Assembly (NCBI GenBank): GCA_004431415.1 | Contig: QPMI01000239.1 | Location: 1 to 64,000 of the forward strand | DNA from: Cyanophora paradoxa CCMP329 | Lineage: Eukaryota > Plantae > Glaucophyta | Length of the DNA stretch: 64,000 bases | Reading direction: 5' to 3' | Shown here: one piece after another, positions 7,337 to 62,351 of the stretch | Position numbering within the stretch: the first letter of the stretch is position 1 | How the letters are laid out: each line of letters opens with the position of its first letter | The notes under the pieces: model-generated | The model's input: the letters and a program-made list of their open reading frames with translations, nothing else | Told to the model about the DNA's origin: nothing | Databases searched by the model: none | Translations under genes and position numbers: made by a program

Positions 7337-7773
7337 CGCTCCCAACGCTCGGCAAGCGCGCAACGCTCAGCTGCAGCACTGGCACCGGCGGGCCTCGACT
7401 TTGCAGTTGCCGTACCCGGGACTCGGGGGGGGGGGGGGGAGGGCGCGGCAGTCGGCCGCGGCCGCGGCCGCGGGCCGGCCGGAGACCGCGGGCCGGGGAC
7501 CGGCCGGGCTGGGACGCTGATTTCTTTCGAGCTCAGCTGCGCATATGCATCACTGAGTTATGCTATGATGCATATGGCCAGTGGCATGCCGGCCGCAGTG
7601 CGCATGCAGGCCTAGGGCGCCCCTGGCCGCCATGGCCACGCGTATACGTACGGCCGAATTCGAATGCTTTCATGCTTACATCACCGTTAATTATCATAGT
7701 ATACGTGCAGCTATATATAGCTAGACTTATAGCTAGAATTCGAGGCTTAATTTGGGACCGTCGGACGCTAGAT

Positions 7774-30473: not shown

Positions 30474-30610
30474 CCCCCTCGCCGCCCCTCCCCTTAGTGC
30501 GTTTACGTATTAGTAGTGCATATTAAGTTGCTCGCGCTCATATTGCACGTGCGGATTCGATTTTGCAAGCCCGACAGATCCCCGGCGCTGCAGCGCCCGT
30601 CTTAGGCTGC

Positions 30611-30775
30611 GCACGAAGTGCAACAGCTGCGATGCGCACGAAGTGCAACAGCTGCGATGCGCACGAAGTGCAACAGCTGCGATGCGCACGAAGTGCAACA
30701 GCTGCGATGCGCACGCCGTGTGACGAAGTGCAACAGCTTCGATCGCGATGCGCACGAAGTGCAACTGTGCAACAG
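30611..30775. repeat. 25-bp minisatellite GCACGAAGTGCAACAGCTGCGATGC, 4 perfect plus about 2 degenerate copies
   Basis: Identical units start at 30611, 30636, 30661 and 30686, with no spacers. Confidence 0.95.
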
Positions 30776-31015
30776 ACGGGCGGGGTACGACGTATCGACG
30801 GTTGCGCCGTCCGTGCGTTTATCCGGAGTCCGGACATCGCGTCGTCTTGTAGTTAGGCGTCCCATCGCACCGGAAACGGTTTTGTCATTGAGCGCTGTAC
30901 CTGGGAGCCCCACAGCTTTGACCTTTCGTCCTGCTCGCTGTGACACGTTCCGGTCTCGTCACCTGCTCAAAATATCCTGGGAATCAGCTAAGCCCCTGAC
31001 TTTCGTACTTGCGTC

Positions 31016-32624
31016 ATGAGCGCGACGTCCGCGGCGGGCCCGCCGCAACCTCCTCTGCGGGACCGGACGAGTTCGGCGCCGGCGGGGCCCAAGTCCGCGG
31101 CGTCAGCATCGGAAGATGGCTACGGCTCATCATCTGAAGACACCGAGCAGCGGGAAGCCGAGGTGCTCGCGCTTCGCGCCTCGAGGTCGCACCTAGGGCC
31201 TCAACCCTTATCTCAGCTGGCGGGCGCTCTGGCCCGAGGAGTGGCCCGCGGCGTCGTTCGCGGCGCAGTCCGCATTCTGCCCAAGGCTGGTAAAACTGAA
31301 GTTATTAAAACTTGGTCTCGCGCATCTACAATTTTACCCAGCGATGGGAGCCGCGGAGGAAGTGTGCGCCTTCCCATTCGAGGTGCGCTCCGAGTGCAAT
31401 CCTCAGACGCGCGCTGCGGGCCGCGCTTCTGCGGTGAGCGACGGGCGCTGAGCGTTCGACGGCCGACGCCGCGGCCGGGGCTCGCAGGTGGCGCGGACAA
31501 AGCTGCAGACGGACAGCCGCGTGGGCAACAGCTTCGAGGCGATCCGGGACGTCGTGCGGCACGAGGGGTGGCGCTGCCTCTTCCGAGGCGTCACCGTGCC
31601 GATCTTCACCGGCATCCTCCAGTCCACCGTCCTCTTCGGCGCGTACGGCACCGCCCACGAGGCCCTCGGCGGCGACCGCGAGAGCGCGCTCGTGAACGCG
31701 GCGGCCGGCGGGGCGGCCGGGGCGGCGTCTGCGTTCATCACGTCGCCGTCGGAGCTGCTGGTGCGGCGGATGCACCACGAGGGCCACGAGTCCGTGTGGG
31801 AGTGCCTGAGGCGCACGCTGCGCACCAAGGGCTTCCGCGACCTCTACCGCGGCTTCGCCCTCACCGCCGCCCGCGACGTCGGCGGGTGCGCCCGCCCCGC
31901 CCTCCCCCCGCGCCCCGCCCTCCGGCGCAGACGCGTACCCCTCAGGTACGCGAGCTTCTTCTGCGTGTACGAGGAGCTCAAGAGGAGAACGCACGCTGGC
32001 GGCGAGGGTACCCCCGTCAACATCGCGGGGGTAGTCCTCTCCGCCGGCACCGCCTCCGCCGCCTACTCCATCTCCACCGTGCGGTACCCCTCCCCCGGCG
32101 CGCCACCCGCCCCACTGATGCTTGCCCTCCCCGCGCACGTCTTGCCTTCCTCAACATTACAGTACCCCATTGACGGTGCGCGTCCTGGCTGCCAGCCGGG
32201 ACCTCTCTGAACAGCGCATGTCTCTCTCTTCCCGCGCTAACCGCGCCCCCGCGCCGCAGTGGTCAAGACGAACGTTCAGCTGAAGCCGGATCTTTACCGC
32301 GGCGCCTCCGACTGCATCCGTCGCCTCCACAACCTCTACGGTGCGTCTGTGCCCCCGCGGGCGCCCTGTACCCCCGGCCGGGTCGAGCCGGGGCTGCGCC
32401 GCAGGCTGGCGGGTCTTCTTCCGCGGGCTGCCCTCCACCGCCATGCACGCCTTCCCCGCCAACGCCCTCGGGTCCGCGACCGCTCCACGCCGCCCCTTCC
32501 CCGACCAGCTCCCTTCTGATCGTAGCGCGGGTACCCCTGCTCCAGGTTCCTCTGCTACGAACTCGTAGCGCAGATGCTCGGCGAGACGGGCGCCAAGACG
32601 AACCCGCACGCCCACCACTGGTAG
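31016..32624 (+). CDS. Mitochondrial carrier family (SLC25) protein, substrate not determined
   Basis: Three Px[DE]xx[KR]-type motifs after splicing: FPFEVARTKLQ, SPSELLVRRM (degenerate) and YPIDVVKTNVQ. Also EGWRCLFRG, GFRDLYRG, RDVG..FFCVYEELKR and FFRGLPSTAMHAFPANA. Confidence 0.92.
31290..31341 (+). other. 52-nt GT-AG intron derived from plastid rps19 coding sequence (NUPT)
   Basis: AT-rich island that translates from 31289 as GKTEVIKTWSRASTILP. Removing it is needed to reach the carrier motif KAAMGAAEEVCAFPFEVARTKLQ in frame. Confidence 0.85.
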
Positions 32625-32831
32625 ACCCCGCGTCCGCCCCGGCCCCGCAGCTGCCACGCTGCCGGTATCTCCATGCGTAGCGATAGGATTCAGTATGGAT
32701 TCCGAATCCCTTCTTTCAAGCAGATTAAGCTTGCTTTAATTTCACGTTATGGCGCAGTGTATAGTGAGTTCTTGTCTACACACTAACAGACCTACGCACT
32801 ATCCCTAGCTGGGTAGGGGGCGGCGCGACGG

Positions 32832-35800
32832 CTACGCGCCCCCGCTGGCGGCGGGGAGGCCGGCGACGCGCCAGACGAGGACGCTCAGGTCGGCGCCGCC
32901 CGTCGAGATCAGGTGCCTGCCGGTGCCGCCGCTCGGCTGGGGCGCTCCGCGGGCGGGGGCGGGGGCGGGGGCGGGGTGCGTCGCCGGCACACCGGTTGTC
33001 GCAGGTGAAGCGGACGTTCGTGACGTGGGAGGCGTGCCCGACGTACTGCAGCGCCGCCGCCTGCGCGGCCCGCCCCGCGTCACCGGCCCCGAGCGCATCG
33101 CAGCGTCCGCGCGGGCAAGGGGCGGGGGGGAGGGGGCGCGGGGCGGGGCGGACCCCCTCCTCGGTGCAGGGCCAGGCGAGCAGGTTGACCTTGCCGAGGT
33201 CGTCCCCCGAGGCGACGACGGTGCGCGCGGCGGGGCCGCTCGGGACGGTGCAGGCGTTGACGTCGTCGGTGGTGGCGCCGGGCGGGAGGAGGCCGGCGAC
33301 CGACCAGCCGACCGTGCACGTCTGCGTCGCCCACCTCGCCCCCTTCATCGACTTCGGGTTCGTGATCTGCAGGCCCGTGAGCGCGTCCCCTGCGGCCCGC
33401 GCGGTCAGCCGGCGAGCGCGAGGCGGGGCGGGGCGGGGCGGGGCGGGGCGGGGCGGGGCGGGGCGGACAGAAGAGGAGCTCGGGGGAGGCGTCCTGGCTC
33501 TGGAGGTACTGCGAGTCGGCGTCCCAGTCGATGTGCGTGACGGCGGCGGCGTGGCCCTTGCAGATGGCGATCCGCTTGAAGCCCTGCCGCGCGTGGTACA
33601 CGTCGATCGCCCGGTCCCGGCTCGCCGCCGCGAGGAAGTTGCCGCTCGGGCTGAACTTCACGTCCGTGATCTCCCCCTGCGCCGCCCCGCCCCGCGTGAG
33701 GCCCCGCCGGCCTCGGGTCGGGGGCGGGCGGGGGCGGACGGTGCGGTTGGCCTTGTTGAAGACCTCGCGCCAGCCGCCGTCGAGGTCGAGCACCATCACC
33801 GTCCCGTGCAGCGTCCCCGCCGCCACCTGCCGCCCCGCGCCCCGCGTCAGGCCGCATGGGGCCGGCCGGGGCGAGGCGGGGGGCACCTGGAGGCCGTCGG
33901 GGCTGATGGCGACGCTACGGACGGCGTCGGGGAGCATGCGCCAGGAGACGAGGCGGCGCTCCCGGAGGTCCCACATCCGCAGCGTCTTGTCGTCCCCGCC
34001 CGTCACGAACCGCGAGGCGTCCGTCGGATGCGTCGCCAGGCCCCACTGCCCCGCCCCGCGCCCCTCAGTGCAGGCCGCCGCCGCCGCGGCCGCCGCGAGC
34101 GCCGGCCGCACCACCTCGCCGTCGTAGTCGGAGCCGCCGGCGCGCTTCGTGGCGTCCCCACTGGGGGCGTGCCCCTGCACGAGCACGCGCACCTTGCCGC
34201 CGCTCTCCGCGATCTCGTAGATCTCGCCGGCCTTGGTGCCCACGAGGAAGGTGCGCCCGCCCTCGCCCCCGCCCTCGCCCCGCACCCCGATGGCCCGCAC
34301 GCAGGGCGCCGCCCCGCTCATGTAGGCGCGCGGGCGCCCGAACTCGTCGACGATGCTCGCCGTGATGGCGCAGAGGTCGATGCGCCGCACGACGCCCTTG
34401 TCCTGGAAGACGCAGAGCTTGCCGTCCTTGCCGCCGCTCACCATGCTCCCCGGCGCATGCCCGCTCGCCACCGCGAAGCACGGGCCCTGCGCCGGCGCCG
34501 GTCGCGCGGGGGCGGCGGGGCGCGGCGAGCAGCGGGGGCGGCGGGGCGCACGTTGTGGGCGGAGATGGTGGCGGCGAGCTCCGTGCCGACCCACACGAGG
34601 ATGCTCCCCGTCGCCGTCCCCGTCCACATCTCGGCCCCACAGAAGGCGGCGGACGTGTAGGTGTTGTTCCCCGTGCCGGGGGCGGCCATGCGGCGGGAGG
34701 AGAGCTGCCCGCCGGCGAGCGCAAAGGCCTTGAGGAGCTTGTGGCCCCCGAGGTAGACGGTGTCGGCGCCGGGGGCGTAGGCGGCGAAGAGGACGGCGCC
34801 GGGGTCGCCCCTGCACGAGGCGAGGGGCCTGGCGGGGCCGGCGGGCGGGGCGGGGCGGAGCTCCCAGAGGGCGAGGGTGTGGGCGTCGTCGCCGCCGACG
34901 GAGGCGAGGCGGCGGCCGTCGCCCGAGAAGGCGAGGGCCACCACGTCGTGCCCGTGGAAGCCCGAGAGGTCCGCCTGCACGGCGAGCGTCCTCGCGTTCC
35001 AGACGAGGAGCGTGCCCCGCTTGCCCAGCTGGCCCGTCGCCACCGTCTCCCCGTCCGGCGCGACCGCCATGCTCACGACGTCCTGCCGGGCGGTCAGGAG
35101 GCTGCAGGACGAGGCAGGGGGCCGCCGCGCACGTCGGAGTGGCCCTGGAAGAAGCGCTGGGCCTTGGTCTTGCCGGAGAGGGCGACGGCGAGGGCCGCCG
35201 TGTGGTAGAGCACCTCCTCCCCGCCCAGCGGGAAGACGTTGGCGCGGCAGTCGTAGCCCCGGTACCCGAAGGCGGCCTCGAGGGCGAGGGACTCCTTGGC
35301 CGGCCTGGCCTTGGGGTCCTTGCGGGGCACCCAGTTGTCCGGCACCGTCGCCAGCGCCGTCCCCATCCACGCCCGGCTCGCCCCGGCCTCCTCCCCCCGC
35401 CCCTCGTCCACCTCGAACTCCCCCGGCCCCGCCGCCGCGGCCGCGGGGGCGGCGCGCTTCGCCCGCGCCGCCGCCTTCGCGGCCCCTTTGCTCTTCTTCA
35501 GGCGCCCCGCCACGTCCTTCGCCGCGTCACTGTCGTACTCTGTCGCCGCCCCCGCCGTGAGCGCAGCCGAGGGGCGATGGGGCTGCGCGGGGGAGGGGAC
35601 CGGGGGGCAGGGCGGCGGGGTCGTCCGCGGGGTCGCCGTCGGTGAAGGCGTGGCGCCACTGGATGACGGCGAGGTCGGCGCCGCCCGTCGAGACCAGGTG
35701 CCGGTCGTCGAACGACCACCGCACGTTCGTGACGTGCTCCGAGTGGCCCGAGTAGGCCTTCGACGCTGCCCGCGGGTACGGGCACGGGTACGGGAAGAGG

Positions 35801-41731: not shown

Positions 41732-42820
41732 CTCGAACGCGCGGCGGCCGGCCGCAGCTCGCCAAGAAGAAGATGTCCACAGGTATCGCCCCCGAAGACA
41801 GCACAGCCCCAGCTAGCTCTTGCGTTGTCCGCAGCTGGTTTGCCTGTGTTGTCAATGCCCAGCTCGGCAAGCGCACGCGTTGTTGTCCAACTAAGCCTAC
41901 TAAGGGGGCAAGGGGGTAGAGGCCTGCTCAGTCATAAACGTTATACCCTCGTCATACTTCGTTCGCGAGCGCAGCGAATTCATTCATGATCACTGATCGA
42001 GAGTCTGTAGAGTCGACGTCAGTCATCGATTTTCGGATCGATCGAATTCGAAGCTTAAGTGCCGGCCCGGCTGGTACGGAGCGCGCACTGCACTGCAGCG
42101 CTAGCTAGCGCTGCAGCCGCGGCGGCGCGCTCATGATCAGCGCGCCGCGGCGCGGCTGATCATATCATCGGATCATGAACACTAGCTATATAGAATCGCG
42201 CTTTAAGAGTGCTCGAGCTCGCGCGCCGAGTCGAGCGCTAGCCTCGGAGCTCCCGGCCCAGCCTGGCAGCTGGATGCATGTGCGGGTTCCGGGGAATTCC
42301 GGGAAAATCGATGTTCAGTCTTACACTGTGATAGTACAATGTACGGGCATGCACATATACTAGGCTGGCCATGGTCTGCAGCTGATCATGATCATGCCAT
42401 GATGGAGCTTGAAGTACACAGGCCAGGCCCTAGGGTCGCCACGGTATCAATGCAACTCAGTGACTCGCGATCATCGGATCGGAAATCGAAAGTAAAAAAG
42501 GCCCTATATATACATACATGTACAGCTAAAGCTAGGACTAAATATATAACTGTAGGTCCGAAAGTCTGGAAACTTGAAATTCGCAGGCATCAATATCCGA
42601 AAACGCGGAAATGCATGCACGACGAAAGCGGGTGCATCACAAGGAAAGCACAAACCGCACGCAAAGCCCTGAAGAGGTCTAGGGCGCGGCGGGTAGACAC
42701 CGTGGCACTATACTCGGACATATATCGAGCTGGGTGTCGATGTCGATGCGATCGATGGCGACGCCGTACGTAATGTTGAAAATCAAAATCGAACGTTGCC
42801 CTGCACGGGCCTCTCGAGAA

Positions 42821-48765: not shown

Positions 48766-51151
48766 GCCCGGCTCCGGCCCCGCCCCTGTACTACCACCCA
48801 CACGAATTCACACCGGCCCCTCCGGCCCTCCAGCTTCGAACTCTTCTAAAGTTCTGGGCTGCGTTTATCGGTAGATTCGATAGATGGTCACTCTGTTTAC
48901 GTAGCGTGTTCGTTTCGTTTGTAATACGTTGTACAACCAGCTAGATTTGTCTTTCCAGTTTGTATAGGTATGCTAGCGCTGGCTTTCATGTCCGTTTGAA
49001 ATATGTCAGCTTTAAAGAGCTGGTTCGGATACTCCGGAGGCTCGGTCGCCTGGAGTGTCTAACTATCAGGCGTTGCTGATCATGAAGATCTAGAGCGGCT
49101 AGCGCTGCTGCAAGTAGCCGGGGGCATTTGCCATATGCATGCCCGCCCGGGCCCGCAGCTGCCCCTGAGACTGAACTTTAATTTGTGTTCGTAGATTCGG
49201 TGATTCCTGATTCCTGATTGTGGTGTCATGATCAGTGTCGGACCATGAGGCGTCAGTTTCTTGATTCATTAAAATTACAAGCCGTTGGTCGAGTCCGATG
49301 TCGTCCTAACTAGTACTTGATAAAGGGCCACTGACTTGCTGCGCGCGTCAGTTGGGTCCGGGGAAGGGCATTTAACCTTGGCGAATCCGAAGCTTAAGAT
49401 CTAGATGCAGAGAGCAGGGACTTAAGCTTAAGCTTAAGAAGGCGCCGCGGCGCGCGGTGGCCGGCCCGGCGGGCGAGCTGCCGGGCCGGCTCCGAGGCTG
49501 GCCGGCGCCATGCCAGGCGAGCTGTCCTCGCGATCGAGGCGAGCTGTCCTCTAGATCTATAGAGGCCTAGGTAGGCCTCAGGGCCTAGCTATATAGGGCG
49601 CGGGCCCCGGGGGCGGGGGATGGCTCGCAAATTGAACCTTGTGTACATGTGGACGTGCTCGAGCTCCTGCGCATGCGCATCCCCCACGACCTGCACGAGT
49701 GCACATGTGCTGCGGGTGCGTCACGGCGTGGCGCGGAGGCGCGCGGCGCCGGCTGGCCTAGGCCTAGGGCCGGGGCTGGCCTAGGCCTGGCCTGGGCCTC
49801 CGCGCGATCTGGGCGCGCGCGGGCGCGGGGACGCTGCTCAAGCTCACGCTCCGCTCAGAAAGCGGCCGCGGCCGGAGGGTCCGTAAGGGCGCTTGCGCAG
49901 CGGGCCGCGGGCCAGCTCATGATCAGCGGCTGCAGCGCTAGCATGCATATGCGCAGGCATGCGCATCTCGCGCGCGCGGGGGCTCCGCGTCGCGCGGCGC
50001 GCGCGCCGCGCGGGCGTCGGCTTGTTGCAACCCAGCCAACCCAGCCGGCGGCCGGCTTGCGGCCGGGCGCAACCCAGCCGCTGAGCCACAGCAAACTGCC
50101 GCGCGCGCGAGAGGCGTAGCCATTGTTGAGCCGAGCCGAGCTGCGGCGCCCGGGGAGAAAGCGGCTGGGGGGGACCGTAAAAAGATTTTTGCAGGGTAAG
50201 TTAACGGACTCTCCAATGTGATTGGCTAGCGCGCGCGACGTCCTCCTACGCGACCGCGCTCGCGCCCGGCCTCGCTCTCGCAGTACGGAATGTCGGGCGT
50301 AATGCGCGCAACGACCTCGAATTGGTCTGGCCCGTATATCTGCTCCCTGTGCGTCGCTGGACCCATTCTTGTTCCGGGTGTTGGTGCCCGTTCCTGGATC
50401 ACCATTTGGTCGGACGGGACCGGGAGACACGGTTTCGGGGTCCCCTGGGGATGGGCTTTCAGGGTATACCGCGCGGCCCGGGTTTTGAGGAGGTCGGGGA
50501 ATTGGGATTCGGGGTGGGGTTGGGCCCGAGGGACAGGGACAGGGGAAGTGTTTTACCCTTCCCCAATAATTTAAGCTAGAGTTATATCATACATAGTATG
50601 TCACTCGCAGCCGCTGAGCCTTTTAAGTTCTCTCCCTCCTGGTAATTTAAGCTATAGCTATAGCTAGAGTTTTACGTCACTCCCAGTCGCTGAAACGTCA
50701 GGCTTCAAGGCTTTTGCAACTCCCTGTTTCAAGTTTTACGTAGCCATTTTGTCCATTCAGGCCCGGCGGCCCGGCCCTTAGGGCCTAGCCTGATCATGAG
50801 CCTCGATCGACTCCGAGGCTCCCAGGGCCCACAGGATGCCTCGGACGGTAGACGGTAGCCTGGTAGCCTGGGAGCTGCACGTCCGTGATCCATTAACCGC
50901 ATATAGCTACTCATTGTCGGCCGGCGTACGCGTAGACCACAGATGTGCTGCTACTTAACAGCTAGCGAACGTCGCGTGCAATGCAACAGATATAGAGAAA
51001 ACATACGCAAATAAAAAAGAAAGCATGTAGATTTAAAAGTATGCCTTGGGCCCCGAGGGAGAAGGGGCGCATCATTGCCAAGTTGCCGAAGAATGCTGGG
51101 CGCGCCCCCCGCGAGAGGGTGGGTGCCAGACGAGGGCTAGCCGCCGGCTGC

Positions 51152-55207: not shown

Positions 55208-56069
55208 ACTCAGCCTGGCGAGCCTGTTCGTTGGACCCTCGAGCTCCTCTTGCTTCGGGGCCGCCAGGGACGAACTATAGCTAGTTACTCGTTTCGTGTA
55301 GTTGCTACCTAATTTAATTTCGATCTCTCCTCCGCAGCCCTCTGTCGCTTAATGTCCAGTACTAGTCTCGACGTCTCTGCCTTCTTGGAACACCGATCAC
55401 GATGTCGTGATGTACATGTCGATCTCGCGATTCAATGATTCTCGAAGGTCGACGGGGTCGACGTCCGACCGTCGCGGGGGCAGCCACGATTCGATGCTCT
55501 TAGGGATCCGATGATCCCGGAGCGATAAGCAGCGGAGCTCGCTGAAAGGGGGCTGATCGAGGGGTCCCCGGCTAACGAAAGACGAAGGCGGCCGCGGCAG
55601 CAGCATCATGGCATCCGGCTCCGGATCCGTGGCGGCGGTCTCGGCCGGCCTCGGCGACGCCAGGCCCACTGGGGCCCAGGCGGAACAGCGGGGGAGGTTA
55701 TAGGCCCGCGAACGCGCCGGCCACGAGATCGAAAAGCGTCCCGGAATTCATCAAGAACCTGTGTCATTCTTGGAGGAACTCGCATAATCTCAATCAAGCG
55801 GGAACTAGAGCTACATACACGGGCTAATGACTCTGACACTGAAAGTGAATTGAAACGGAAAGGGCTCCTATAGGCTATAGCTGGTAGTACTGTCTGTGAC
55901 TGCAATTTCCCGAAACAGCCGTAATGAAAACAGGTGCGCATGCGCCGGCGCCCTCGGAAGCAGAGGGACCCGCCCACGTGGATATGTACAAGGCGGAGAT
56001 CCCGGCCGCTTCACCTCCTGGCTGCTGAAAGCTGTTCTGCTGAAAGAAAAGCGGGCCGGCTCGCCCCCT

Positions 56070-61540: not shown

Positions 61541-62351
61541 ACCGTTGCCTGCGTGTCTTCGCAAGTATTTCCTCGCACACCGACCATGGGCCTGCAGCTG
61601 GCGGCGCTTCGCTCTCGGCTTGGGCGTCGGCGTCGGCATCCTCCGATGCTCGCGCGCTTCGCGCGGCGGCCTCCGACCCGCAGGCGTCTCCGCGCGGCCC
61701 CATTTTCCTCTTGGATTCCCTCTCCGGCCTCCTGGCCAAGCTGCGAGCGCGATATTAAATGAGTCCTGGCATGCATATGGGTACTTCTCGCGACAAGTTG
61801 AGCTTAGCCATAGATCTATACTAGCTAGAGATTTCGATATCGAAATGTCAACTTTAATTTGTTCATGATATCGATCATGGTCTGCTCGCCACGAGCCGCT
61901 GAGCTTGCCGCAGTGCAATTGCGTTTCCGCGAGCCGCGAGACTTCGAGGCTCCTCGAGGCTTGGGGGGGGGGGGGGGGGGGGATGGCCTCGAGGGCATTA
62001 TTTCGTTTCAATTGCAGGAGGGCATTACAGATCGATTTCATGAGTCACTGAGTCACTGAGTCAAGCAAGAGGCCCGGGGGGGGGCGGGGCGGGGTCCAGC
62101 TGCAAGCCCTGGCTCAGTGGGCAACGTTAACGGGGTTCGCCTAGGCCTGCCTGTACTTGGCCATGGCCACTAACTGCGACGTTCCCAGCTCCGAATTTTC
62201 TCTTTTCTTTTCTTCCCGATCTTCAAATTTTCTTTCAAGTTTGCCCAAGTTGATTCACTGCGTCAACTTGCGCTTGCAAGATTTCTCTTTAATTTGCAAC
62301 AACGCATCTCGGAGTCCGGATCCAGACCTACTGCAGGGGCTAGAGCTGGCC

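What the first reader, a model, noticed from the sequence alone, without database searches (positions are those of the whole stretch)
31289..31341. A spliceosomal intron made from plastid rps19 DNA: apparent one-step intron birth by organelle-DNA insertion
Seen: within a very GC-rich mitochondrial-carrier gene lies an AT-rich 52-mer, GTAAAACTGAAGTTATTAAAACTTGGTCTCGCGCATCTACAATTTTACCCAG. It is bounded by GT..AG, and its removal is required to reach the carrier signature (KA|AMGAAEEVCAFPFEVARTKLQ); retention causes a frameshift. Read from 31289 it encodes GKTEVIKTWSRASTILP in AT-rich codons. Established: xxKTWSRASTIxP is the conserved core of cyanobacterial/plastid ribosomal protein S19, and from memory (unverified) the Cyanophora plastid protein reads ...SGKTEVIKTWSRASTILPM.... 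Inference: 31289-31340 was inserted between host codons GCT and GCG. The donor GT then comes from the plastid Gly codon GGT and the acceptor AG from the insert's last A plus the host G, so the insertion is spliced out without changing the protein. It lacks the GC-rich signature of neighbouring introns, so it looks recent. This would be a rare traceable case of intron gain by double-strand-break capture and may mark a genome-wide route.
Basis: partly seen in the sequence, partly recalled or inferred. Interest (0 to 1): 0.9.

Follow-up and report, generated by a model that had tools for sequence, protein, structure and literature searches.

The report
Spliced intron made of plastid DNA
A 52-base intron in a nuclear mitochondrial-carrier gene of a very GC-rich alga is an unchanged piece of the plastid's ribosomal protein S19 gene and is cleanly spliced out of the mRNA, a rare case where an intron's source DNA can be named.

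Summary

- **The intron.** Window 31290-31341 is an AT-rich (37% GC) GT..AG intron in a nine-exon Mito_carr gene. The gene's other seven introns are 65-85% GC and start GTGC/GTCC.
- **Splicing.** Transcript contigs from two studies skip exactly these 52 bases. The public gene model does the same.
- **Donor.** In two independent DNA runs (2012 and 2024), AT-rich contigs at about 17-42 times nuclear depth match 31287-31340 at 54 of 54 bases. They then continue into the rest of a cyanobacterial-type S19 reading frame, so the donor is an organelle rps19, plastid-type.
- **Junctions.** Nuclear-depth DNA contigs in both runs cross the right junction. The left junction rests on the assembly and the mRNA only.
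- **No older intron.** The intron consists entirely of the insert plus one host G, so no older intron sequence is left.
- **Protein unchanged.** The spliced protein keeps the family's spacing at the site.

Best explanation: capture of a plastid DNA fragment at a chromosome break created a working intron in one step.

The kind is already known from mitochondrial DNA (Bigelowiella, Daphnia); a plastid donor is a new member. Absence of the intron in relatives, and a genome-wide route, could not be tested. The scan holds one further unchecked candidate in this genome, on other DNA.

The parts
31016..31162 (+). Exon 1 of the mitochondrial-carrier gene (start codon 31016-31018)
   Evidence: Transcript contigs X15/X17; matches residues 1-49 of public model P0006
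31163..31216 (+).
   Evidence: Joint 31160->31215 (cut +2) in two RNA runs
31217..31289 (+). Exon 2; its last base G is the first base of the split Ala74 codon G|CG
31290..31341 (+). Intron 2: the 52-nt plastid-derived spliceosomal intron. Donor G|GTAAAA, acceptor TTTTACCCAG|C, phase 1, GC 0.37
   Evidence: Skipped exactly in transcript contigs of two studies; absent from P0006; composition and donor are outliers
31287..31340 (+). 54 nt identical to high-depth organelle (plastid-type rps19) contigs. 31287-31288 (CT), perhaps also 31289 (G), are microhomology with the host codon GCT(G); 31289/31290-31340 is the captured fragment
   Evidence: X1 record 5 and X4 record 16: 0 other letters, 0 gaps. 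The loose ends continue the S19 frame
31342..31382 (+). Exon 3 (41 nt): ..MGAAEEVCAFPFE, the start of the first carrier signature
31383..31487 (+). Intron 3 (105 nt, GC 0.76, GTGCGC donor)
31488..31885 (+). Exon 4 (Mito_carr PF00153, E=2.6e-23)
31886..31945 (+). Intron 4 (60 nt, GC 0.85)
31946..32078 (+). Exon 5
32163..32175 (+). 13-nt micro-exon (YPID + 1 base) carrying the Px[D/E] of the third carrier signature, flanked by two 84-nt introns (32079-32162 and 32176-32259)
   Evidence: 12 letters between the two sides of the joint in both RNA runs (table 5c)
32260..32624 (+). Exons 7-9 (32260-32340, 32405-32471, 32546-32624 including the stop), with introns 32341-32404 and 32472-32545

Best explanation
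A 51-52-bp fragment of the plastid rps19 coding sequence was captured in the nucleus during end-joining repair of a double-strand break. It was inserted into the carrier gene between codon 73 (GCT) and codon 74 (GCG). The fragment runs from the Gly codon GGT to the first base after the Pro codon of the conserved ..KTWSRASTILP.. core. By chance it supplied G|GTAAAA at its 5' end and a pyrimidine-rich TTTTACCCA at its 3' end; together with the host G this reads CAG. The spliceosome therefore removes exactly the inserted bases, and the mRNA and protein are as before the insertion.

Shown here:
- identity to the organelle DNA;
- the S19 reading frame continuing in the donor's flanks;
- exact removal from the mRNA;
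- the right junction in nuclear-depth DNA;
- no leftover older intron sequence;
- unchanged spacing in the protein.

Inferred:
- the direction of transfer (plastid to nucleus);
- the break-repair mechanism;
- that no mutation was needed after insertion (one step);
- that the event is recent.
For: -, donor: contigs at 17-42 times nuclear depth in two DNA runs (2012 and 2024) match 31287-31340 at 54/54 and run on unlike the window.
- the rebuilt 114-nt donor stretch is one open S19 frame.
- that 37-aa fragment is most like cyanobacterial S19 (30/37).
- only S19 hits in the PDB and Pfam.
-, splicing: transcript contigs of two studies skip 31290-31341 with GT..AG ends.
-, nuclear DNA: nuclear-depth DNA contigs (depth 14 and 62) begin at 31311 and run through 31341 into the gene. 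This is what a 31-mer graph gives when 54 bases are shared with the plastid.
- public model P0006 equals the nine-exon structure.
- the intron is the only one of eight with a GTAAAA donor and low GC.
- from the conserved LP to the signature Q, the spliced protein aligns without gaps to its closest homologues, so no codon was gained or lost at the site.
- Sequence itself: 51 of the 52 intron bases are the plastid fragment, and all 54 shared bases, including the GT and the acceptor A, are unchanged.
Against: - No DNA contig of X1 or X4 was laid on 31189-31286. The bin depths there equal the plastid contig's share alone, so the left junction is supported only by the window assembly and by exon 2 ending at 31289 in mRNA.
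- The published plastid and mitochondrial genomes were not available, so 'plastid' rests on depth, AT-richness and cyanobacterial-type sequence.
- Chloroflexota S19 come close (28/37).
- No empty-site allele or orthologue was seen, so gain rather than retention is argued from anatomy alone.
- A microhomology of 2-3 nt is expected by chance about 1 time in 16 to 64.
- Zero differences in 52-54 nt only bounds divergence below roughly 6%, so 'recent' is soft.
Confidence: 0.85

Rival explanations
1. The plastid fragment landed in, or replaced, an intron that already existed at this position, so no intron was born.
For: A distant fungal homologue (Naganishia albida, P0007) has a phase-1 intron two codons downstream of the aligned site. 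Carrier genes are intron-rich.
Against: The intron has no bases left over: 51 of 52 are the plastid fragment and the last is a host coding G. The fungal intron is 6 nt away, in a homologue of about 21% identity in the aligned N-terminal stretch, with at least six introns. About 10% of sites would have an intron that near by chance.
Confidence: 0.05
2. Assembly or library chimera: the 52 bases are not in the nuclear chromosome, and the 'splice' is an artefact of mapping mRNA to a faulty assembly.
For: Independent DNA contigs do not cover 31189-31286, so the left junction is unconfirmed (depth arithmetic). Organelle reads are abundant and can contaminate assemblies.
Against: Contigs at nuclear depth in two independent runs, made 12 years apart, start at 31311 and carry 30 insert bases fused to exon 3. 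A chimera would not recur at full nuclear depth. The insert is bounded by working GT and AG exactly where the mRNA is joined.
Confidence: 0.02
3. The donor is not the plastid but the mitochondrial rps19, or a bacterium living with the culture.
For: Both organelles are AT-rich and high-copy. The core motif also occurs in Clostridia, Chloroflexota and Actinomycetota. The organelle genomes were not at hand.
Against: The best matches of the 37-aa donor fragment are all cyanobacteria. No alphaproteobacterium appears among 120 motif-bearing loci. The only three database proteins sharing its words are S19 proteins of similar type carrying the same ..EVIKTWSRASTILP..MVGHTIAV.. stretch; their taxa were not identified. 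The same 860-nt contig appears at about 17-42 times nuclear depth in runs of 2012 and 2024. That fits a resident organelle rather than a variable contaminant.
Confidence: 0.05
4. Two-step origin: the insertion was first tolerated or deleterious, and splice sites arose later by mutation (intronization).
For: Intronization is a documented route elsewhere (PMC3443670).
Against: All 54 bases shared with the donor are unchanged, including the GT and the acceptor A. The remaining G is a host coding base. Retention shifts the frame, so an unspliced allele would have destroyed the carrier.
Confidence: 0.03

Closest known systems
[quoted passage not shown]
   Same: A non-intronic fragment of organelle DNA, inserted into a nuclear protein-coding gene, is removed as a GT-AG spliceosomal intron.
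   Different: The donor there is mtDNA and the host gene a GTPase-superfamily gene in a chlorarachniophyte. Here the donor is a plastid-type rps19 coding piece in a carrier gene of a GC-rich primary-plastid alga. I could not read the primary paper, so junction details could not be compared.
[quoted passage not shown] 2009, as reviewed in PMC3443670)
   Same: Filler DNA of organelle origin is captured at a break and spliced. Short junction homologies are taken as the end-joining signature.
   Different: The Daphnia gains were shown to be polymorphic in populations, and 43% had flanking short direct repeats. Here there is only 2-3 nt of microhomology on one side and no population data.
NUPTs (nuclear plastid DNA fragments)
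   Same: A short stretch (tens of bp) of very high identity to plastid DNA sits in nuclear DNA. About 250 inferred nupts from 374 BLAST hits were counted in the Cyanophora paradoxa draft genome (PMC5570036). In Amorphochlora most NUPTs and NUNMs lie in introns (PMC12730881).
   Different: Those fragments sit inside longer, pre-existing introns or between genes. Here the fragment is the whole intron.
Organelle DNA insertions that become exon sequence (Noutsos et al. 2007, cited in PMC5570036)
   Same: An organelle fragment inside a nuclear gene is accommodated by the expression machinery.
   Different: The outcome is the opposite: there the fragment is translated; here it is spliced out and contributes no residue.
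Introners / transposon-derived introns (PMC9860276)
   Same: A recent, traceable intron gain by DNA insertion.
   Different: There are no copies elsewhere in the window, no terminal inverted repeats and no target-site duplication. The source is a conserved organelle gene.

Membership tests
U2-type GT-AG spliceosomal intron | GT at the 5' end and AG at the 3' end | tested here: met
   G|GTAAAA ... TTTTACCCAG|C at 31290-31341
U2-type GT-AG spliceosomal intron | Absent from mature mRNA, with the flanks joined in frame | tested here: met
   Transcript contigs of runs X15 and X17 (two studies) skip exactly 52 nt. Public model P0006 joins residues 73|74|75 across it.
U2-type GT-AG spliceosomal intron | Branch point and pyrimidine tract upstream of the acceptor | tested here: inconclusive
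   A T-rich run (AATTTTACCC) lies before the AG, and a possible branch region TCTACAA lies 13-16 nt upstream. The lariat was not mapped, and no consensus for this organism was derived.
NUPT (nuclear insertion of plastid DNA) | Near-identity to the organism's plastid genome | tested here: met
   54/54 match to high-depth, AT-rich contigs in two DNA runs, whose flanks continue a cyanobacterial-type S19 frame. The published plastid genome itself was not compared.
NUPT (nuclear insertion of plastid DNA) | Physically joined to nuclear DNA on both sides | tested here: inconclusive
   Right junction: nuclear-depth contigs from 31311 onward in X1 and X4. Left junction: only the window assembly and the mRNA exon end; no DNA contig was laid on 31189-31286.
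NUPT (nuclear insertion of plastid DNA) | Donor is the plastid rather than the mitochondrion | tested here: inconclusive
   The closest bacterial S19 are all cyanobacteria, and no alphaproteobacterium is among 120 motif loci. This is a strong hint, not a direct comparison with both organelle genomes.
Intron gained by organelle-DNA capture at a double-strand break | Intron sequence homologous to non-intronic organelle DNA over its whole length | tested here: met
   51 of the 52 intron bases lie within the 54-nt identical stretch, which is rps19 coding sequence.
Intron gained by organelle-DNA capture at a double-strand break | Intron absent at the orthologous site in relatives or other alleles | not testable with these tools
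   The closest homologues (P0009-P0012) were found only as cDNA-like contigs or in an intron-free compact contig. No joined form was seen in the DNA contigs of X1 or X4, but contigs cannot show absence.
Intron gained by organelle-DNA capture at a double-strand break | End-joining signature (microhomology, or short repeats or filler at the junctions) | tested here: inconclusive
   2-3 nt (CT or CTG) are shared by host and donor at the left junction. The right junction is blunt, or has a 1-nt filler. This is compatible with end joining but weak statistically.
Intron gained by organelle-DNA capture at a double-strand break | Host coding sequence restored after splicing | tested here: met
   The alignment from LP to the signature Q is ungapped against the closest homologues; the frame is kept.
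Introner / transposon-derived intron | Multiple near-identical copies, terminal repeats, target-site duplication | tested here: not met
   Unique in the window even with 3 mismatches. No inverted or direct repeats at its ends. Only this 64-kb window was searched.

The most novel reading that the evidence does not exclude
Organelle-DNA capture is a recurrent, still active source of new spliceosomal introns in this genome. AT-rich plastid or mitochondrial fragments carry by chance enough splice signal to be removed at once, even in a genome whose native introns are 65-85% GC. A measurable share of its short AT-rich introns would then be datable NUPTs or NUMTs. The scan already holds a second, unchecked candidate in the same genome: an rpoC1-like fragment forming an intron in a PPR gene (s1-512830).
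Probability: 0.3. Interest if true: 0.85.

Novelty: new member of a known kind. Interest (0 to 1): 0.65.

Why it matters
How new spliceosomal introns arise is a long-standing open question, because almost all introns are too old for their source to be recognised. Here the source, both boundaries and the outcome can be read directly.

- The donor is a conserved plastid coding sequence, copied without change.
- The donor GT and the acceptor A come from plastid codons.
- The mRNA is restored exactly.

This supports the break-repair/filler-DNA model with a donor (plastid) for which I found no report in the searchable literature. It also shows that the spliceosome of a very GC-rich genome accepts an AT-rich intron with a different donor type at once.

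It makes a concrete survey possible: compare every annotated intron of this genome with its organelle genomes, and look for empty sites in related strains to date the gains.

The intron itself is already in the public gene model. What is new is where it came from.

Tried and rejected
- **Exact plastid S19 protein not retrieved.** A read-through reference with the region limited to the motif gave only three related S19 proteins of similar type at 76-89%. Their clusters carry no organism names.
- **Metagenome scan.** An exact 31-mer scan of metagenome contigs found nothing.
I replaced it with a degenerate-pattern scan of bacterial genomes.
- **Contigs for the public model.** The look-up of encoding contigs has no contig on record for P0006.
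- **Intron presence or absence in relatives.** The closest homologues from the exhaustive search (P0009-P0012, 35-40% identity) exist only as contiguous-ORF (transcript-like) contigs or in an intron-free compact contig. The test could not be made.
- **Fungal homologue.** The Naganishia gene has a phase-1 intron two codons away. I judged it coincidental.
- **Other AT-rich islands.** The 13 others in the window look intergenic or UTR. None has a convincing protein-family hit; the best was B12D at E=0.028.
- **Repeat or transposon origin.** Rejected.
- **Spliced protein.** I did not build or search a joined one. Exons were checked one by one by reference, and the only full-length protein used was the public model returned by a search tool.

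Full report
**1. What is in the sequence.**
The quoted AT-rich 52-mer is present. The GT..AG unit is 31290-31341, and 31289 is the G before it. Host codons read ..CCC AAG GCT G | intron | CG ATG GGA.., so the intron lies in phase 1 inside an Ala codon.

Read from 31289, the stretch encodes GKTEVIKTWSRASTILP. A 22-aa translation across it matched only ribosomal protein uS19 in the PDB: 58 of 58 hits, with chloroplast uS19 among the best. It also matched Pfam Ribosomal_S19 at E=1.6e-4.

The window is 72% GC and the 52-mer is 37% GC. Fourteen islands of 50 nt or more fall to 36% GC or less. Of these, only this one lies inside a gene and carries a protein-family signal. The 31-mer 31310-31340 is unique in the window, and shuffles give no match.

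**2. The host gene.**
Transcript contigs define nine exons from 31016 to 32624. Exon 4 alone scores Mito_carr at E=2.6e-23.

A search with a stop-free reference covering exons 4-5 returned a public gene model, P0006 (343 aa, EukProt name tig00001024_g6320.t1). Each exon's in-phase translation sits in that model in consecutive order. Residue 74 (Ala) is the codon split by the 52-nt intron. The intron is therefore already annotated as an intron; its origin is the new point.

It also did not mention a 13-nt micro-exon at 32163-32175.

The other seven introns are 54-105 nt long and 65-85% GC, with donors GTGC.. or GTCC... This one is GTAAAA with low GC.

**3. Where the 52 bases come from.**
I laid the contigs of four public runs on 30800-32900.

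| Run | Year | Contig on 31287-31340 | Its depth | Nuclear contig depth |
|---|---|---|---|---|
| X1 | 2012 | 860 nt, 0 differences | 592 | 14-35 |
| X4 | 2024 | 860 nt, 0 differences | 2004 | about 62-68 |

- Beyond the 54 bases these contigs run on unlike the window, as AT-rich sequence.
- I joined the 30 loose letters on each side to the 54 shared bases. This gives one open frame of 37 residues. It reads as S19 throughout, with ..LLNTS before the G and MMVGHTIAVH after the P.
- The nuclear stretch is thus an exact copy of part of an organelle rps19 gene present at about 17-42 times nuclear depth.

**4. Plastid or mitochondrion?**
The organelle genomes were not available and run names are coded. 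I then ranked the 75 loci with the literal peptide by identity to the 37-aa donor fragment.

- The best are all cyanobacteria, at 29-30 of 37: Calothrix, Nostoc, Aetokthonos, Waterburya, Snowella, Symploca.
- Dehalococcoidia reach 28 of 37.
- No alphaproteobacterium appears.
- The only three database proteins sharing words with the motif are S19 proteins of similar type, carrying the same EVIKTWSRASTILP..MVGHTIAV stretch; their taxa were not identified.

I conclude a plastid donor, with modest residual doubt.

**5. Is it really in nuclear DNA?**
*Right junction: yes.* Nuclear-depth contigs start at 31311 and run through 31341 into the gene. One is 613 nt at depth 14 in X1; the other is 1663 nt at depth 62 in X4. 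Starting 30 bases inside the insert is what a 31-mer graph does when the preceding bases are shared with a much deeper plastid path.

*Left junction: not independently shown.*
- The bin depths for 31226-31296 (83.4 in X1 and 282.2 in X4) equal the plastid contig's contribution alone (592.3 x 10/71 and 2003.7 x 10/71).
- So no DNA contig of either run was laid on 31189-31286.
- The likely cause is inference. This short piece lies between a branching 30-mer at 31157-31188 and the very deep plastid path, and contig clean-up probably dropped it.
- The left junction rests on the window assembly and on exon 2 ending at 31289 in mRNA.

**6. Is it spliced?**
Contigs of X15 and X17 come from two studies. 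They are labelled only 'RNA?', but they skip eight GT..AG introns, so they are spliced transcripts. Both join 31289 to 31342 (table 5).

The small extra depth over the insert in these runs fits contigs that cover only 31287-31340. Those would be plastid rps19 RNA, not unspliced pre-mRNA. Contigs cannot exclude a minor retained form.

**7. New intron, or insertion into an old one?**
- Of the 52 intron bases, 51 (31290-31340) lie in the stretch identical to the donor, and the last (31341) is a host G. No older intron sequence remains.
- All 54 shared bases are unchanged, including the GT (from Gly GGT) and the acceptor A (the base after Pro CCC). No later mutation was needed.
- The spliced protein aligns without gaps to its closest homologues from the conserved LP to the signature Q. 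The event therefore neither added nor removed a codon.
- Host and donor share CT, or CTG, at the left junction. The right junction is blunt.

This is the pattern expected for filler-DNA capture by end joining. The microhomology is too short to be strong evidence.

**8. Relatives.**
The exhaustive protein search gave one clearly closest homologue, P0009 (40% identity, E=3.7e-51), and a few more at 35-38%. All were found only as contiguous-ORF contigs: transcript-like ones, or one compact intron-free genomic contig. Presence or absence of the intron in relatives could not be tested.

A distant fungal homologue has a phase-1 intron two codons downstream of the aligned site. That gene has at least six introns and only about 21% identity in the aligned N-terminal stretch, so I treat this as coincidence.

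**9. Prior knowledge.**
- Intron gain by break repair with organelle filler is an established proposal.
- It rests on a Daphnia intron similar to mitochondrial 16S rRNA, and on an mtDNA-derived intron in a Bigelowiella natans GTPase-superfamily gene (PMC3443670, PMC4757882, bioRxiv 10.1101/051292).
- NUPTs are known in bulk. About 250 were inferred in the Cyanophora paradoxa draft genome (PMC5570036), and in Amorphochlora most lie within introns (PMC12730881).
- Full-text searches found no report of a spliceosomal intron made wholly of plastid DNA, nor of this case. The library lacks most subscription journals.

**10. Other notes in this scan.**
One first-reader note on another piece of the same genome (s1-512830) proposes an intron built from an rpoC1-like fragment in a PPR gene. 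I could not check it. It is a lead for a recurrent route, not evidence.

**11. Verdict.**
This is a plastid-derived, one-step spliceosomal intron: a new member of a known but very sparsely documented kind.

Open points are the left junction in raw reads, a direct comparison with both organelle genomes, an empty site in relatives, and genome-wide frequency.

I did not build or search a joined spliced protein. Exons were handled by reference, and the only full-length protein used was the public model returned by a tool.

Noticed in passing
window 32163-32175: A 13-nt micro-exon (YPID plus one base) flanked by two 84-nt introns. It carries the Px[D/E] of the third mitochondrial-carrier signature. 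It is present in both RNA runs and in the public gene model.
   Followed up: partly
window 31163-31216: A 54-nt intron that is in frame and stop-free, so it reads through as coding.
   Followed up: yes
window 31157-31188: DNA contigs of both runs (X1, X4) break here. Several tiny contigs share this 30-mer, and one carries different upstream letters (CGACACGCCCGT). The 30-mer is unique in the window. It may be a repeat elsewhere in the genome or an allelic variant. No contig covers 31189-31286.
   Followed up: partly
window 30583-30765: A tandem array of a 25-nt unit (about 5-7 copies, the central ones identical) lies just upstream of the carrier gene's transcript start. The transcript contigs begin at 30823-30869.
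   Followed up: no
window 7653-7761, 42157-42586, 50541-50674, 55269-55331, 61795-61888: The AT-rich intergenic islands repeatedly contain TATAGCTAG-like words (CTATATATAGCTAGA, GCTATAGCTATAGCTAGAG). This may be a shared promoter or terminator motif, or footprint sequence.
   Followed up: no
L125 and L126 (Logan contigs with P0011): A 38%-identical carrier homologue sits in a compact, apparently intron-free contig. In L126 it lies next to a second Mito_carr gene in tandem.
   Followed up: no
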